A stretch of DNA of 64,000 bases from Mytilus edulis (lineage: Eukaryota), in the NCBI RefSeq assembly GCF_963676685.1, contig NC_092351.1:41416001-41480000 (forward strand), written 5' to 3'. Positions 10,527-17,844 of the stretch are shown here, in pieces. Positions within the stretch are counted from its first letter, which is position 1. Each line of letters begins with the position of its first letter. The position numbers and the translations under genes were made by a program. Under the pieces are notes generated by a model. The model was given only the letters and a program-made list of their open reading frames with translations. It was not told the origin of the DNA and ran no database searches.

Positions 10527-11305
10527 ACTAGAGGCTCTAAAGAGCCTGTGTCGTTCACCTTGGTCTATGTGCATATTAAACAAAGGACACAGATGGATTC
10601 ATGACAAAATTGTGTTTTTGTGATGGTGATGTGTTTGTAGATCTTACTTTTACTGAACATGCTTGCTACTTACAATTGTCTCTATCTGTATAGACTTGGC
10701 CCTTAAGATACAGAGGAAAATATTTTGTAAAAATTTACAAAAATTTACCAAATAAATGAAAATTGTTAAAAAATTACTATAATGGGCAATAACTCCTTAA
10801 GGGGTCAACTGACCGTTTTGGTCATGTTAATTTATTTGTAAATCTTACTTTGCTGAACATTATTGCTGTTTGCAGTTTATCTCTATCTATAATAGTATTC
10901 AAGATAATAACCAAAAACAGCAAAATTTCCTGAAAATTACCAATTTAGGGGCAGCAACCCAACAACGGGTTCTCTGGTTCATCTGAAAATTTGAGGGCAG
11001 ATAGATCTTAACCTGATGAACAATTTACCCCCCGTGTCAGATTTGCTCTAAATGCTTTGGTTTCAGAGTTATAAGCTAAAATCTACATTTTACCCCTATG
11101 TTCTATTTCTAGCCATGGCGGCCATCTTTGTTGGTTGACCGAGTCACCCCAATGATGATTGTGGCCAAGTTTGGTTAAATTTGGCCCAATAGTTTCAGAG
11201 GAGAAGATTTTTGTAAAAGTTAACGACGACGATGACGGACGACGGACGCCGGACGCTGGACGAGGGACGCCAAAAGATGAGAAAGGTGAGCCAGGTGAAC
11301 TTAAA
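10527..11305 (+). mobile_element. Non-autonomous Helentron/HINE (Pearl-like) element
   Basis: 5' hairpin aggctctaaagagcct with gttcacc subterminal motif; internal ~170-bp repeats; (GACG)-type microsatellite at 11224-11270; 3' ggtgagccaggtgaac. Confidence 0.65.
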
Positions 11306-11609
11306 ATATGAATAAACCTAACTCAATATGGTCTCCTTAGTTTCAGCTTTATCCTAAAGATGACATTGCTATGTATTAGGGTTGTGTATATAAATGTCTA
11401 AGTAAACATACTACTGGGTTAGTATTGAATCACATGGTAAAAGATGGTGTCTATCAAATAACTTTAAAATACAATCTGTACAAACTATTTTCGCTAGAGT
11501 AGAAAATTACACCTTTTACACAACGTATATGAATATGAAGCAGCTGTAACAAAAAAAAACTTGTACGATTTGCTATATTTTTTCCTCATACTGCATACAT
11601 GTAAAAGTC

Positions 11610-11801
11610 ATTTCCTGGTAGGATGTTCTTGGTCAACAATCGGTGGTTTACGTGGCAGTTCAATAATATACTCCTGATTGCGCTTGTTCTTGTAATTAAG
11701 TCGGTTGAGCTCCAAACCTGAAGACAGCTCTGTTCAGTTAATCTCTCTTTCTTGTACGAAACATCATTCTAAATTCCATTTTAATTCTGGTTGAAAATAT
11801 A
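11610..11801 (-). pseudogene. Decayed SARAH-coding last exon of the SAV1-like gene (now probably 3' UTR)
   Basis: ttttgcag acceptor at 11802-11804. SARAH-like fragments FQPELKW / MMFR / YKKE / LELNRL are spread over different frames with stops. Confidence 0.5.
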
Positions 11802-11847
11802 CTGCAAAAACAAATATTTTGTGAGTTAAATATGAACATTATAATGT

Positions 11848-11990
11848 AATAGTTATCAAAGGTACCAGGCTTATAATTTCATACGCCAGACGCGCGTTTC
11901 GTCCACATAAGATTCATAAGTGACGCTCATTTCAAAATATTTAGAGAGTCAAACAAGTACAAAGTTGAAAAGCATTTAGGACCCAAAATC
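11848..11990 (-). mobile_element. Retrozyme-like copy with mutated hammerhead (G5>U)
   Basis: Minus strand 11883-11927: agcgtca-CTTATGA-atcttatgtggac-GAAA-cgcgcg-TC-tggcgt. Confidence 0.65.
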
Positions 11991-12258
11991 TCAAAAAAAA
12001 TGTGTCAATTCAAATACGTATAATTTTTAACCCGGAAAAATAAATCATGACAGTCATAAGCTCTAAGCGAGCATTACAGCCAATGGTTTTAATCAAAAGT
12101 TTATTGTTTTTCTTGGACGGCAGTTAAAAAAAACTCTGTTAAATTCAATAAATTAAAAACCTTGCTATTTACATGAATTCTTACGCTAAAGAAATATTTT
12201 TTTAAGTTGAAATGATTTTGGATTTTTACTACAGGCACATAGTATGTACATACCTTTA

Positions 12259-12323
12259 TCATTTCACCATATGATTACATTGATGTCTGTCTTTTAAGTA
12301 AGCGTGCAACCAGTAAGGCATTG
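12259..12323 (-). CDS. SAV1: SAV1-like exon 4 (ends in TGA at the conserved Trp)
   Basis: ttttcacag acceptor, phase 1. AMPYWLHAYLKDRHQCNHMVK* aligns without gaps to SAV1 EIPDWLQVYARAPVKYDHILKW (recalled). TGA then TAA, then donor gtatgt after 12254. Confidence 0.75.
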
Positions 12324-13402
12324 CTGTGAAAAGATGTTCATCCATTTCTAAATATGTTATCTTTGTTTATGAATAAAAGGATATTCTAGATAAATGTGAA
12401 CGAGACAAAATGCTGACAACAATTTTTTTTTTCATTTTAATAGAAATATCTATATTGGAAAGTAAAATGTTCCCACCATAATATGAAAGCTTCAATTATA
12501 TTCTTTTCTTGCAATTCGTCTAATTTATTTCTTTCACTTTGGTTTGTTTGTCCCCTTTTTCTAAAACTACTTATTTTGTATTTAACATTCAATCTATAAT
12601 CTAACAGACAGGGCATGCTCCAAAATTTATAATTGTGTACGTCATTTATTTTTAGAATCCGATTGAAATTCTCCATTTTGCTTGCTTCTGAATCCTTTTT
12701 GTTCATAAAATATTATTTATATAACATGTTTTTTTTATAAATGTTGTCTAAACCTACAAAACAAATACCATTAGACTTATAGACAACATTTGACAGGTGC
12801 CTATAAGAATTCTTTAAATTCTAAATCAACCCAAATCCGTCTATAAAATCTGTGAACAAATTTAAAATAAAAAATAGATTAAAACAATTATGTTATCAAC
12901 TCTCCATTCTTCAAAAAAAAAAACAAATAGTGAAGATATGACATTAGATAACAACTGGTGATGTTCCAAACTAAGGGCTGGCAAAAAAATTGGTTATGCG
13001 GTTAAATAAGTTTTTTTGTAAGTCTCACTACCATCTTGTCTTAATCTCTATCAATGAACAAAAAATATAGTACAGTACTTACTTCTAAAACACAGTATAA
13101 AAATAAATAACAAAAACATAAAATAATTAGATAATAAAAACAAAAAGAAAATCAATATCTTACTGATTTTAAAAATGCATTATGTAATTGTTTCCATCCT
13201 CGTCTTTTGGTCTCTGGTTGATATGTGTCTCATTGGCATCATACCACATCTCCTAACCTGAAGATCGTTGTTTCCAAAAAGGCTCAATCTACTCGACCTG
13301 TTGGTTTATAATGGTTTATAGTAACTATCTATACAGTGATAGGTAAATTTTATGTGCCACTGTGGGACATAGGTTTTGACAATAAAAAACAAACGAACAT
13401 AC

Positions 13403-13551
13403 CGTGTGCTCGGTATGCTTTTCCTGGAACCAAGTTAAGTTGTTGTTTCTGAGTATTCTCTGAGATGTGTTCTAAAGTTGCTTGCTTTTCTTCATCTTGA
13501 AATTGTGATTGCACGAAGGGATGTTCATACTTAGCAGTTTTTGTAAGAAGA
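13403..13551 (-). CDS. SAV1: SAV1-like exon 3 (end of WW2, LVP motif)
   Basis: tttcag acceptor (phase 2), CAC G|gtatgt donor. Encodes NLLTKTAKYEHPF...NLVPGKAYRAH. Confidence 0.85.
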
Positions 13552-14171
13552 CTGAAATGTAACATATTATAAAATCGTTAAAACATATGCATATGTGTAC
13601 AATTAAAAAAGGACCAAACAGAACTCACAGTTCGATACAAGGGAGACGACACTGTGACCAAAATAAGTAGGTGGATAAATATTATATCTATTAAATATGG
13701 GTCGATATAAAGCTCCTGTTCACGATTGTATATCTTTTATTAATCCGTTTGTTGTACAGTATTTAACAGTTCGCAAAGTGTTGGTGGTTGTACATGATAA
13801 CTTGCCTGTCAAGGTCGACAATTCTAATTTTTTCAGACTAGTTTAATGTTTTAATATCATATCCAGTAACTGGAATTTCTATAACTCATTTTTAGGTTGA
13901 GCGTGACAAGTGTTAGACAGTAGTCTGTCTTTTATATACCATGGTTTTGTTTCTGTTTCTTCAATCAAATTTCGATTTTTAAATGCCTAATTAAGTTTCT
14001 TTGTAATTTCTTCTGAGCTGTTTCAGTTTTTAACTACAAACGGAAAATTGGTTTGTTTTTTGTTATGCGCTTACACATCCAAAGTGTAATATGTGCATAC
14101 AATCATATTTACTGACAAATATGAATAAATTTCAGTGTTTGACACAATTACTATAATCATAAATTACAAAC

Positions 14172-14379
14172 TTGACATAATAAACGCCATGTTTTTGAGA
14201 CTCTATTCTATCCCAGTTAGTTGGCAGACTATCTTTTATAAGAGGATGACTCCAGTGTGTTGATTTCTTATTGTGGTCAATGTAGTATTTTCTACCACGA
14301 AATGTCCAATTATAACTCCAACCCCTCGGTAAAGATATTTCTACAGTTTCGTGTGTTAACTCGTCGTCTCTTTTGAATG
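14172..14379 (-). CDS. SAV1: SAV1-like exon 2 (WW1 and most of WW2); not in the ORF track
   Basis: ttttgcag acceptor, gtttgt donor. [54 protein letters not shown] closely matches the Salvador tandem WW ([27 protein letters not shown]). Confidence 0.92.
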
Positions 14380-15272
14380 CTGCAAAATGTACAACTTAGT
14401 TGTTAATAAAAAAAATATTTACTTGACAACAATTTTTAGCATAACAAAATTCTATTTTAAGTTGTTTACATTCAGTAATGATAGTTGTTCTTTACAAGAA
14501 TTTTTAACAATTTACATAAAGCTCCCAACAATATAATTTCAAGAATAAGAAGACCGAAAGACTCAGAAATTAATAACTATGGATCATCGAACGCCTTCAA
14601 TAATTAGTACAGCCCTGGTCATATGATAGAAAATGTTTTCTGGCATACATTCCACATTTCTGAATTTATCATAAACATGCATACGATGACCTATGAACAT
14701 GCCGTACGATGACTTATAGTTAATTTATATGTCATTTGGTTTCTTGTGGAGAGTTGTCGCATTGGCAATCATACCACATTTGTTTTTTATATACAGAAAC
14801 CAAACTTCAATCTGAATGTCAACCAGTATAAAGATATTAAAACAACATTTATGTTGGACATGTTGAGTGGGCTGAATGTTTATTACTAAAATACTTCGGT
14901 GGCTTATGAAATTTGTTTTATTCTTGTTTAGTCTGTTTTAACACAGGAAATGTAGGCTTGATCGATGTTAAGGGGTGCAACTCAAAAGGGGGAGTTTATG
15001 TTTTTGTCGGAGTTGGAATATTTGTTTTAGATCCTATCAATCAAATTTATTTTTAGCATTCAACAGATTACATGGGATTCTGATAACACTGAAAAATGAA
15101 TGTTCACCATGATACAATAAGACTGAAAGAAAACAAGATTTTTAGACATACAAATGCCATAAAAATTAATAGAAACTCTTCAAATATACCAACTGTCTGA
15201 TATTTGGTAGGTCAGACGCGTAATGTATGGGTACAAATATGTAGTTAATGATCAATCATCTTTTTAGTTTAC

Positions 15273-15978
15273 CTGAGGCGTCTGGATTTCCACGACAAAT
15301 AATGTTCTCTTCATTTGTCAAATGTTGTTTATCTCTACATTTTTCAGAATTTCGTTCCTGTTCTAATCGTTGATGGTTACATATAGTTTGAGCATTGATT
15401 TTACCTGCATCACACAACTGTTGTATTGCTTCCCATTGACTTTGTATTTTAGGATTCTCTTCTAATTTTTGTTCACTTTCCTGTTGTTCAGACATTTGAT
15501 CCATCTCTGATAAAGGATAAATTGTTTTACCTTTTACTGAACTTTGTTCTACATCTGGTGATTTACTTTGTACAGGAGTAAAATGTTCTAACTCGGACAA
15601 AACCTTAATTGCTCTGCTTTGTTCTTGCATGGCTTCTCTCATTCGTTTGAGTCCATCCTGCAGAAGAAATGCAACTTTTTGCAATTCCGTTTCTGACTTT
15701 TTGAGATTCGTTCTGTTTGCTGAATTTTCCGAATCTACTCCAGCCATTAAAATGTCAACTGGTTTTTGGATTAAATGATCAATAGTCGCCATTACCATTT
15801 TGAAAGCATCCGTCAGAGCGTTGATTGCTGTCCTTAATTTACCATTTCGTAATTTTAAATTGAATGTATCACCTGAACTAGAACTTCCATATGTACTCGA
15901 ATTATACGGAGATTTATTTCTGGTCTTGAAGAAAAATAAATCCTCTGAACTAGTATTACATAAACTTCCACTATCCAT
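15273..15978 (-). CDS. SAV1: SAV1-like exon 1 (Ser-rich start, predicted coiled-coil region)
   Basis: 240-aa ORF with an in-frame TAA upstream; TCA G|gtaaac donor in phase with exon 2. The four exons total 706+208+149+65=1128 nt, i.e. 375 aa. Confidence 0.8.
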
Positions 15979-17844
15979 ATCGTTACCGGGGAGTTAAATG
16001 CAACGGGAAACAACTGTTTAGGTGCAAAATGTATCATAAACCTACAAAACGACAAATTAGTAGTTTCGTTGTCACAAATTTCACCTTGATCCTATTTTTA
16101 GCCACTAGTATTGTGTAGTATCTAAATTTAAACGAACAACAATACAATCCTTTAAATTCTTTACATTCCAAAACATATATAAATAGAGAAAGTATGTTAT
16201 GATAAATTATCCTACCTGTAAGCAATGTAAAAGAAAACAAAAGCTATATTGATTGCAATGATTGCTTAGTTTAAAGACAATAACAACATACTAAAATCTA
16301 TTTTTAATTAATTTTTGATAATGAAACAAAAAGCAAACTAGCAATTAATAACGTATGAACGTATGTGTGGAGAACCGGAGATGACCCTCACAAGGGTGAC
16401 AGCGGGAATAAGTTTTTTTTTAATCATATTACATCGTTATTATATATTAGGGTATGGATGGGGTTTACATAACACAGAATAATGGCCAAACAAATTAACA
16501 TTGATTAATAAAGAGAGAAAATGAGAAAAAAGTAAAGATATTATAATGTGGTCCAATAGTATAAAACAAATAACTGTGAGAAAAATAATTATGTATTATA
16601 ACACTAATTATAGAAATGAATGCAAATCAATTCAATTCAATAAAAAATATCAATTATAAATAATACAACATACATGAACGATGTACATAAAAAGAAATTC
16701 ATGTAAACAGTTATAAAGTTAAAAGTAAATTTACATTGTATGTTTGTGAATATTCTACAGAATAAGCGTTATTTTTAAAGATTATGCGAGTAATGACCCA
16801 AAAAATCAATAGATTGAGATTAAAATATTTCATTTGAAATCAGACTTTCTTAAATCATATGGCAGAGTGTACTCATAGAACTTTGTCTGTTATTTTTTAT
16901 GAAAGTTGGAAAAGGAAAAATTCGTAAAAAGTAAGTGAAAATATGTCTTTCGATATAAAAGACCAGTTAGATAACACCAATCTTGTTTGTGTAACACATG
17001 TAACAGTAAGCAATTTTAACGGCCATATTTTTGAAATAATACAAGAACAATTTTGTAAATTCATTTTTAATCATTCCAAACATCCTACAATTATGTCATT
17101 TATACGTTTAGATTGTATGATGCTCATTCAAACAAACAGGTTAGCAACAGTAATTTGAATTAGAGGTCGTTTACTAAGTCATCACTAAAACACTACTAAA
17201 ACTAGTATCTCAATTCTTTGTAAAACAATTGAAAGGTCTTTCCTGTAAAAGCGATGTTTTCGTAATGTACTTGTTACGACCTTTCGTTTGATATACGACA
17301 AGCATCCCTTCTGAAATTTTTCGCTTTTTACACTTAATGACTTCATTCGCCTACATTTTTGAGATCGGAAGTATGATATATGTAACACAGGGTACATGAG
17401 CTTTCATTTGATATGCGACAACGCCATGTTCTAAAAAGTTTGATTTTTGCACTTAATAACCCCATCCAACCAATTTTTGGAGGTTGGGAATTTGATATTT
17501 CAAATGTACACATCATGACCTTTCATTTGATATACAATAACCCTATCGTAAAAGAAAATTTATTTTTTGCACTCAATGACCCCATCCAACCAATTTTTGG
17601 GGGACGTCAATTTGAAATTTGAAATGTACGCTTTATGTTCTTTCATTTGATATGCGACAACCTTACCATCTGAGAAATTTGAATTTTTGCACTAAATGAC
17701 CCCACCCTTCCACATGGGATGAAAAAGAGGTTTAAGATTTTCATTTTTAAGTAGAGTTTATTAATATTTTCAATTTGATATATCAGATGACCCCATTTGA
17801 CAAAGTGCCAAAAATGATGCAATATCAACGATATAAATAGAAGT

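What the first reader, a model, noticed from the sequence alone, without database searches (positions are those of the whole stretch)
12259..15978. SARAH-less Salvador paralogue: a possible natural decoy of the Hippo pathway
Seen: four exons with consistent phases give an uninterrupted 375-aa protein with Salvador-type tandem WW domains. The conserved Trp at the start of the SARAH region is TGA, immediately followed by TAA, and the next exon holds only frameshifted SARAH remnants while upstream exons are fully open. Known: Salvador binds Hippo/MST through SARAH and PPxY partners through its WW region. Inference: decay confined to the part after the stop suggests the truncated protein was retained. 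It could bind WW ligands without recruiting Hippo/MST, making it a dominant-negative or rewired scaffold. Genuine SAV1 is usually single-copy, so a canonical copy is expected elsewhere.
Basis: partly seen in the sequence, partly recalled or inferred. Interest (0 to 1): 0.85.

Follow-up and report, generated by a model that had tools for sequence, protein, structure and literature searches.

The report
Mussel Salvador-like gene without SARAH
Blue mussels carry an expressed, conserved extra gene that joins a mussel-specific helical domain to the two WW domains copied from the Hippo-pathway scaffold Salvador, but ends just before the part that binds the Hippo kinase; it is a real lineage-specific chimeric gene, and its role as a Hippo "decoy" is untested.

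Summary
The gene is real. It lies on the minus strand and has four coding exons (15978-12259) giving 375 aa, identical to the public Mytilus edulis protein XP_071126276.1. It ends in TGA TAA.

Spliced RNA contigs from two studies join E1-E2-E3-E4. They then splice from a donor 5 nt after the stop into a fifth exon that is 3' UTR only.

A SARAH profile built from 75 Salvador proteins finds the canonical SAV1 on chromosome piece C3 (E 1.6e-22). It finds nothing in the window, so no "SARAH remnants" were detectable.

In canonical SAV1 the conserved Trp is the first codon of the next exon. The TGA is therefore not a mutated Trp codon. It sits in an 8-nt exon extension at the old exon border.

Only residues 236-375 derive from Salvador, and three intron positions and phases are shared with SAV1. 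Residues 1-235 belong to a Mytilus-specific helical family.

Five Mytilus assemblies keep the reading frame open and SARAH-less. The domains are 89-96% conserved against 72-78% for the linker, which points to retention by selection.

A decoy or rewired-scaffold function is plausible but untested.

The scan had already noted the canonical SAV1 elsewhere in this genome (s1-832572).

The parts
15273..16071 (-). Exon 1: 5' UTR (at least 16071-15979) and codons 1-235 plus one base. ATG at 15978, donor G|GT at 15273|15272.
   Evidence: ORF. RNA contig X1 record 5 covers 16071-15273 joined to 14379.
15583..15891 (-). N-dom, residues 30-132: a Mytilus-specific two-helix hairpin domain, not Salvador-derived.
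   Evidence: Family found by HMMER and aligned. AlphaFold2 gives helices 36-83 and 87-131 with block pLDDT 85-96. No Pfam hit, no PDB sequence hit and no PDB fold hit. 94-95% identical between species.
14172..14379 (-). Exon 2: WW1 (14332-14243, residues 252-281) and the first half of WW2. Acceptor AG at 14381-14380, donor AA|GT.
   Evidence: Pfam WW 28.5 bits against a cut-off of 26.9. Human SAV1 WW tandem E 3e-23. Joints 15273/14379 and 14172/13551. Same exon end and phase as canonical SAV1.
13403..13551 (-). Exon 3: second half of the atypical WW2 (Tyr in place of the second Trp; WW2 = residues 287-316, 14227-13518 across intron 2) and the linker.
   Evidence: RNA contig X1 record 2.
12254..12323 (-). 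Exon 4: pre-SARAH motif MPYWLHAYL (12321-12295), last codon AAA 12264-12262, TGA 12261-12259, TAA 12258-12256, then AG and the donor GT at 12253-12252.
   Evidence: Sequence. Alignment to canonical exon 6. Joint 12254/11801 in RNA contigs of X1 and X2.
11802..12253 (-). Intron 4 (GT..AG). It holds part of a retrozyme-like repeat.
   Evidence: Joint 'skips 452, CT..AC'. Repeat depth at 11764-11957.
11458..11801 (-). Exon 5: non-coding 3' terminal exon (3' UTR, at least to 11458). All three frames close within 7-21 codons and there is no SARAH signal.
   Evidence: One diverged copy (73-88% identity) lies 312 kb away at C8:41.114-41.115 Mb.

Best explanation
This is a Mytilus-specific, transcribed and selectively maintained chimeric gene.

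Origin (shown in part, inferred in part): a DNA-level partial duplicate of SAV1 kept only the three exons for WW1, WW2, the linker and the pre-SARAH motif. It is spliced behind a first exon that encodes a lineage-specific helical-hairpin domain (N-dom) plus a variable linker. The reading frame ends in TGA TAA at the ancestral exon border, 5 nt before the last splice junction. The last exon is only 3' UTR.

Product (shown): a 375-aa protein. It lacks the Salvador N-terminus and lacks the SARAH domain through which Salvador pairs with Hippo/MST.

Mechanism (inferred): the intact WW1 pocket still binds PPxY partners of the Salvador type, such as Warts/LATS-like proteins, but cannot bring the Hippo kinase to them. 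It either competes with canonical Salvador for these partners or ties them to whatever the N-dom binds.
For: - Exon structure and the 375-aa ORF.
- Spliced contigs in two studies give E1/E2, E2/E3 and E4/E5. One 559-nt contig runs E3-E4-E5 without a break. A few raw RNA-seq reads cross E1/E2 and E2/E3. Fourteen small runs in five studies hold 21-34% of the sampled words, about the exon share of the stretch.
- No retrocopy: exons 1 and 3 have a single full-identity locus each.
- SAV1 origin: the WW tandem is 72% identical to the C3 gene and matches human SAV1 at E 3e-23. Three exon borders share position and phase. The pre-SARAH motif is kept.
- SARAH is absent from the window, while the canonical exon is found.
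- Retention: the frame is open and SARAH-less in five Mytilus assemblies.
- Retention: identity to the two most distant orthologues is N-dom 94-95%, WW 89-96% and linker 72-77%. Fisher p values range from 1e-5 to 8e-3.
- Retention: all indels between orthologues are in frame.
- Retention: a neutral simulation gives P(no new stop) of 0.017 at the observed overall divergence and 0.001 at linker-level divergence.
- Retention: the 12 differences listed in RNA contigs split 6 synonymous to 6 non-synonymous over 218:907 sites, pN/pS about 0.24, binomial p 0.017.
- Retention: the tree shows a very long stem (about 2.5-3.3 changes per site) and a very short crown.
- The WW1 residues aligned with human SAV1 (YYIDH, THW, P) are kept.
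Against: - No binding or pathway read-out of any kind was obtained.
- The polymorphism count is small and comes from an incomplete table.
- Expression in the two raw RNA-seq runs is low or absent.
- WW2 has Leu where Salvador proteins have His (YYVNL against YYVNH), so the ligand range may have shifted.
- The post-WW region is strongly diverged (32-36% identity to canonical).
- Mytilus genomes are rich in lineage-specific duplicates, many without a known role.
Confidence: 0.6

Rival explanations
1. The gene is functional, but the Salvador WW module has been reused for partners unrelated to Hippo signalling. In this reading the gene is best seen as a member of the N-dom family that captured a WW module, so 'decoy of the Hippo pathway' is the wrong frame.
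For: - The N-dom is the best-conserved part. It belongs to a family of at least 8 loci in this genome, mostly small stand-alone proteins.
- The very long stem branch and the changed WW2 and post-WW residues suggest new specificity.
- RefSeq names orthologues 'MAGI2-like' or 'uncharacterized'.
Against: The WW1 binding residues and the Salvador-specific tandem arrangement are kept, with the closest match to the SAV1 tandem. The pre-SARAH motif, which has no known use outside Salvador, is also kept and conserved.
Confidence: 0.28
2. It is a transcribed but functionless partial duplicate on its way to decay (a unitary or unprocessed pseudogene).
For: It lacks both ends of Salvador. The stop lies at a disturbed exon border. 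Expression in raw RNA-seq is low. One M. galloprovincialis RefSeq model skips exon 3 and shifts frame (P0012). C-terminal ends differ between species.
Against: - The frame is open in five assemblies, with in-frame indels only.
- Conservation is domain-wise.
- There is an excess of synonymous differences.
- The probability of escaping stops under neutrality is low.
- Splicing is clean.
Confidence: 0.1
3. It is an artefact: either an assembly error at the stop, or an unseen splice form that continues into a SARAH exon.
For: Only contigs, not raw reads, cover exon 4. 140 joints and 196 differences in the read table were not shown.
Against: The same end appears in independent assemblies and species. 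The E4/E5 joint in two runs lies after the stop. No SARAH-like sequence exists anywhere in the 64-kb window in any frame.
Confidence: 0.02

Closest known systems
Salvador / SAV1 (WW45), the Hippo-pathway scaffold; canonical copy in this genome at G000:C3 about 44.43 Mb
   Same: SAV1-type tandem of a canonical WW1 and an atypical WW2. Conserved pre-SARAH motif (IPxWLxVY type). Identical intron positions and phases at three borders.
   Different: No SARAH domain. No Salvador N-terminus (MLSKKK...GKYVK...LRN region). No Gln-rich tail. A foreign 235-residue N-terminal part. Strongly accelerated sequence change on the stem branch.
Truncated splice isoforms of human SAV1, and engineered Salvador lacking SARAH
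   Same: WW domains without the MST/Hippo-binding SARAH. A review notes that truncated SAV1 isoforms 'may not complex' with MST1/2 (PMC5867882).
   Different: Those are isoforms or laboratory constructs of the single SAV1 gene. Here the loss is fixed in a separate gene, conserved across a genus and combined with a new N-terminal domain.
Other WW-tandem scaffolds (MAGI2/3, KIBRA, NEDD4 family)
   Same: Tandem WW domains that read PPxY motifs. RefSeq names two orthologues 'MAGI2-like'.
   Different: No PDZ, guanylate-kinase, C2 or HECT domains. The single-stretch match is clearly best to SAV1: 84.7 bits over 56 residues, against about 22-24 bits per WW for NEDD4L.
Mytilus N-dom family (unnamed; e.g. 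M. edulis XP_071124041.1 and XP_071126787.1; M. coruscus CAC5415953.1)
   Same: Shares the roughly 100-residue two-helix domain with the conserved S-x-D-T...RN..L and KSE..L...L..G motifs.
   Different: Most members are stand-alone proteins of 123-175 aa. Only this gene couples the domain to WW domains.

Membership tests
Salvador / SAV1 | Tandem WW domains: WW1 canonical, WW2 atypical with Tyr in place of the second Trp | tested here: met
   Pfam WW above cut-off. 56-residue alignment to the human SAV1 tandem, E 3e-23. WW2 ends AKYEHP.
Salvador / SAV1 | C-terminal SARAH domain that pairs with Hippo/MST | tested here: not met
   The CDS stops at the border before SARAH. PF11629 gives no match in the window. 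A Salvador-SARAH HMM gives nothing in the window but E 1.6e-22 on the canonical gene. tblastn and DNA alignment are negative.
Salvador / SAV1 | Conserved Salvador N-terminal region | tested here: not met
   Exon 1 has no similarity to the C3 gene. The canonical N-terminus is present on C3. Exon 1 belongs to another family.
Salvador / SAV1 | Descent from SAV1: shared intron positions and phases, and the pre-SARAH motif | tested here: met
   The borders YYV-N (phase 2), after the linker (phase 1) and the start of the pre-SARAH exon coincide. The motif is aligned. In the tree the clade attaches next to the mytilid canonical sequence, with weak support (80/74).
Salvador / SAV1 | Binding of Warts/LATS PPxY motifs and of Hippo/MST | not testable with these tools
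   No binding assay was possible. The one complex prediction run concerned the N-dom and gave no verdict.
Pseudogene (unprocessed partial duplicate) | Broken frame, no proper transcript, neutral evolution | tested here: not met
   Open frame in five assemblies. Spliced RNA. Domain-wise constraint and a synonymous excess. A formal dN/dS was not computed.
Mytilus N-dom family (unnamed) | Two-helix domain of about 100 residues with the invariant S35, D37, L48, L55, L77, L92, L99 and L106 pattern | tested here: met
   phmmer hits with E from 1e-23 to 7e-4 over residues about 25-135. Alignment A1. Helices at high pLDDT.

The most novel reading that the evidence does not exclude
The N-dom has taken over the part that SARAH plays in the canonical pathway. 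It would be a lineage-specific helical interaction module shared by a Salvador-like WW scaffold, by a family of small stand-alone proteins and, in one M. coruscus gene model, by a GCK-III (MST4-like) Ste20 kinase. Mussels would then run a parallel, rewired Salvador-kinase module, or a natural dominant-negative regulator of Hippo signalling. This could bear on growth control and on mussel transmissible cancers, in which 'SAV1' is reported as down-regulated.
Probability: 0.1. Interest if true: 0.75.

Novelty: new variant of a known kind. Interest (0 to 1): 0.45.

Why it matters
Salvador is normally a single-copy core scaffold whose function depends on SARAH. A genus-wide, expressed and constrained gene that keeps only its WW module would be a natural experiment on what that module does without Hippo. 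It would also be a clear case of gene birth by exon shuffling.

There is a practical point as well. Public mussel annotations call this gene 'SAV1' or 'scaffold protein salvador'. Transcriptome studies that report 'SAV1' may therefore be measuring a SARAH-less paralogue and drawing the wrong pathway conclusion. One example is the MtrBTN2 cancer study PMC10564563, which reports log2FC -3.65.

Tried and rejected
Orthologous DNA of other Mytilus could not be fetched and dN/dS was not computed. Protein-level conservation, a small synonymous/non-synonymous count and a drift simulation were used instead.
- SARAH remnants were sought four ways: PF11629 on the genome, tblastn with the canonical exon, DNA alignment with shuffles and a purpose-built Salvador-SARAH HMM on six frames. 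All were negative in the window. A weak 11-residue tblastn match at 12496-12464 (E 5) lies in intron 3, out of order, and is taken as chance.
- The 7-residue match LSELEHF (exon 1) to LNELEHF (canonical SARAH) has E about 9 and is taken as chance.
- N-dom identity: Pfam, PDB sequence profile (the hits came only from the kinase and WW columns of other rows), Foldseek PDB (nothing below E 4) and ESM Atlas (no usable hit).
- Complex prediction of two N-dom copies gave no verdict (score 0.08, mark 0.32). This is not evidence either way.
- The N-dom + kinase architecture (P0019, M. coruscus) has no close counterpart in this genome, where N-dom loci and kinase loci lie on different pieces. It may be species-specific or a fused gene model, so it was not used as support.
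- The copy of exon 5 at C8:41.115 Mb has no N-dom or WW exon within 20 kb, only transposon-like ORFs and a FAMeT-like fragment. The origin of exon 5 stays open.
- Literature searches found no description of this gene. The supplements of PMC10564563 are not held.
Searches used exon-wise references or the public protein P0013. Scripts mapped codons across exon borders in memory only.
Full report
WHAT IS THERE

The window is G000:C8:41416001-41480000. It comes from a 1.37-Gb genome at about 31% G+C and contains no N.

The gene lies on the minus strand. An ATG at 15978 opens a 706-nt first coding exon that ends G|GT at 15273|15272. The next exons are 14379-14172, 13551-13403 and 12323-12254, each with AG/GT borders and phases 1, 2 and 1.

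The coding sequence is 706+208+149+62 = 1125 nt = 375 codons. It ends AAA TGA TAA AG|GTATGT. TGA is at 12261-12259 and TAA at 12258-12256.

Each exon-wise translation sits at the expected place (1-235, 237-304, 306-354, 356-375) in the public protein P0013 = XP_071126276.1, an 'uncharacterized protein' of Mytilus edulis. That protein's contig length of 90,587,198 equals that of C8. The window is therefore from the M. edulis RefSeq assembly, and the 375-aa model is already in the databases.

Searches used exon references or P0013.

TRANSCRIPTION AND SPLICING

Fourteen small runs from five studies hold 21-34% of the sampled 31-mers of 11600-16000. That is about the exon share of the stretch.

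I laid four runs on 10600-16400. Contigs of X1 and X2, from different studies, show three joints: 15273/14379, 14172/13551 and 12254/11801. All three have GT..AG ends on the minus strand.

- One 1031-nt contig runs from 16071 through exon 1 into exon 2.
- One 559-nt contig runs E3 (149 nt), then 68-70 nt that can only be E4, then E5 down to 11458.

The donor in use lies 5 nt after the TGA. The contigs that cross that joint cover 47 and 34 nt of exon 4, and no listed difference falls there.

Raw RNA-seq run X24 has three reads across E1/E2 and one across E2/E3. X21 has none, so expression in those samples is low.

Exons 1 and 3 have only one full-identity locus each in the genome. The spliced contigs therefore come from RNA, not from a retrocopy.

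By the vertebrate 50-55-nt rule (my own knowledge), a stop 5 nt before the last junction should not trigger nonsense-mediated decay.

WHICH PART IS SALVADOR

Exon 2 carries a WW domain (Pfam 28.5 bits, cut-off 26.9). Its best single-stretch PDB match is the human SAV1 WW1-WW2 tandem: 7BQG/7BQF, E 3e-23 over 56 residues, with YYIDH, THW and P of WW1 kept.

The genome has one other such tandem, at C3:44433203-44433343, 72% identical. That locus is the canonical SAV1:

- It has seven open exons, mapped with a mytilid SAV1 protein.
- It has a Salvador N-terminus and the pre-SARAH exon ...IPQWLHVYSRGAPEHDHKLK|gtaagc.
- Its last exon starts WDLFRLNELEHF. That exon matches the SARAH chains of fly Salvador (6BN1_B, E 4e-7) and human SAV1 (6AO5_B, E 2.6e-6).
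- It then runs into a long Gln-rich tail.

The paralogue's exons 2, 3 and 4 correspond to canonical exons 4, 5 and 6. Three borders coincide in position and phase: YYV-N (phase 2), the end of the linker exon (phase 1) and the start of the pre-SARAH exon. This shows duplication at the DNA level.

Exon 1 has no similarity to the canonical gene.

THE STOP

The canonical intron lies exactly between Lys and Trp (K|W).

Relative to the canonical exon end, the paralogue has 8 extra bases (TGATAAAG) before its donor. Two origins fit this. Either the old donor was destroyed and the next GT was recruited, or a 2-nt insertion occurred in an ancestral AAATTAAAG|GT. I cannot tell which.

NO SARAH REMNANT

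Exon 5 starts at 11801 and closes in all three frames after 6-20 residues. I found no SARAH signal in four tests:

- PF11629 on the genome finds the Hippo/MST-like kinase on C12 (E 1.5e-19) but nothing in the window.
- tblastn with the canonical exon finds nothing in order.
- DNA alignment of exon 5 to the canonical SARAH exon scores 27, against a shuffle mean of 26.
- An HMM of the SARAH region built from 75 Salvador proteins scores the canonical exon at E 1.6e-22. It scores nothing in the six frames of the whole window below E 4.

Exon 5 has one diverged copy 312 kb away (73-88% identity). That copy includes the acceptor region and sits among transposon-like ORFs and a FAMeT-like fragment.

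THE N-TERMINAL PART

A full HMMER scan of 1.84 billion representatives with exon 1 found only 12 proteins. Beyond the orthologues these are mostly proteins of 123-175 aa. Every member that carries a source name is a Mytilus protein; the others are unnamed Logan or ENA records. This genome holds at least eight such loci, on C8 and C12.

The shared part covers residues about 30-132 and has a distinct conserved pattern. AlphaFold2 predicts two long helices, 36-83 and 87-131, with block pLDDT 85-96, and a third helix at 174-228.

Pfam, the PDB sequence profile, Foldseek and the ESM Atlas gave no match for this domain.

One M. coruscus model (CAC5415953.1) joins the domain to an MST4-like kinase. 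No close counterpart exists in this genome, so I treat that model only as a lead.

CONSERVATION

Proteins from independent assemblies end at the same ...HMVK: M. edulis (two assemblies), M. galloprovincialis, and XP_063414394.1.

XP_052077106.1 and XP_052077107.1 read on for 10-11 residues into exon 5 (...HMVKDK(A)EYFQPGLK). This fits a one-base difference before the same donor. No form has SARAH.

The tools did not print the species of those two RefSeq sets. From the accession ranges I take them for M. trossulus and M. californianus. This rests on my own knowledge, not on a tool.

The M. coruscus model P0004 contains the peptide CEMIK. That peptide is the window's ...TGAAATGATAAAG read in another frame, so M. 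coruscus very likely shares the TGA TAA.

Identity of the M. edulis protein to the two most distant orthologues, by region:

| Region | Identity |
|---|---|
| N-dom | 94-95% |
| Linker 133-235 | 72-77% |
| WW region | 89-96% |
| Post-WW | 84% |
| Pre-SARAH | 85-92% |

- N-dom against linker gives Fisher p 1e-5 and 2e-4. WW against linker gives p 8e-3 and 9e-4.
- All indels are in frame.
- In a neutral substitution simulation, the frame escapes new stops with probability 0.017 at 15% amino-acid divergence and 0.001 at 25%, before counting indels.
- The twelve coding differences listed for the RNA contigs are 6 synonymous and 6 non-synonymous over 218 and 907 sites. That gives pN/pS about 0.24 and binomial p 0.017. 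The sample is small and the table incomplete.
- In a tree of the WW-to-pre-SARAH region, the paralogue clade (100/100) sits on a stem of about 2.5-3.3 changes per site, with crown branches of 0.07 or less. It attaches next to the mytilid canonical sequence, with weak support of 80/74.
- No such paralogue appeared outside Mytilus among 5.8 billion proteins. The next hits are ordinary Salvador proteins at 52% identity or less.

READING

Shown: this is a real, spliced gene conserved across the genus. Its product joins a mussel-specific helical domain to the Salvador WW tandem and lacks SARAH and the Salvador N-terminus.

Inferred: after a burst of change the protein came under purifying selection. 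WW1 still reads PPxY partners, and the protein cannot recruit Hippo through SARAH. It could compete with Salvador for those partners, or it could link them to partners of the N-dom.

WW2 carries Leu where Salvador proteins have His, so its specificity may have shifted.

A role outside Hippo signalling is a serious rival. Plain decay is unlikely, and an artefact is close to excluded.

A complex prediction for N-dom self-association gave no verdict.

KNOWN OR NEW

The protein is in RefSeq and ENA under mixed names: 'uncharacterized', 'SAV1', 'scaffold protein salvador' and 'MAGI2-like'.

Full-text searches found no paper describing a SARAH-less Salvador paralogue in mussels. A review notes only that truncated human SAV1 isoforms may not bind MST (PMC5867882).

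A study of the mussel transmissible cancer MtrBTN2 reports 'SAV1' down by 3.65 log2 units (PMC10564563). Which of the two genes was measured cannot be checked here.

I class this as a new variant of a known kind, of moderate interest.

LIMITS

Exon 4 is covered by contigs only, not by raw reads. Most rows of the read tables were not shown.

Noticed in passing
window 10650-11230 (both strands; reads mostly first mate on +): RNA reads and contigs pile up by the thousands on a repeat. Many joints 'go back' about 433-466 nt (for example 11219 to 10759, over 1100 reads in X21), with 12-19 other letters between the two sides. This fits tandem or circular RNA of a unit of about 460 nt.
   Followed up: no
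window 14674-14867 and 13200-13250 (introns 1 and 3): A short interspersed repeat shares the core CATTGGCA(A/T)CATACCACAT. It has very high depth in RNA runs and loose ends on both sides at 14735 and 14779.
   Followed up: no
G000:C8:41113747-41115161 (L022, L023): A diverged copy (73-88% identity) of the gene's non-coding last exon, including its acceptor region, lies 312 kb away. It is next to transposon-like ORFs and a FAMeT-like fragment at about 41109084-41109377. No N-dom or WW exon lies within 20 kb.
   Followed up: partly
P0019 (M. coruscus CAC5415953.1); G000:C3:103296796-103305839: A M. coruscus gene model joins the N-dom to an MST4/STK24/STK25-like kinase domain. In this genome the nearest kinase exons (48-54% identity) lie on C3 and the N-dom loci on C8 and C12. 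The fusion may be species-specific or an annotation artefact.
   Followed up: partly
L007:8584-9732 (G000:C3:44436584-44437732): The last exon of canonical SAV1 encodes SARAH followed by a Gln-rich tail of over 300 residues ending ...IETKV. This is unusually long compared with human or insect Salvador.
   Followed up: partly
P0003, P0005, P0012 (public gene models): Older or alternative models of this gene differ. M. edulis P0005 fuses a FAMeT domain in front of it. M. coruscus P0003 joins the same first exon to an unrelated C-terminal part. M. galloprovincialis XP_076070358.1 skips exon 3 and shifts frame in exon 4 (319 aa).
   Followed up: no
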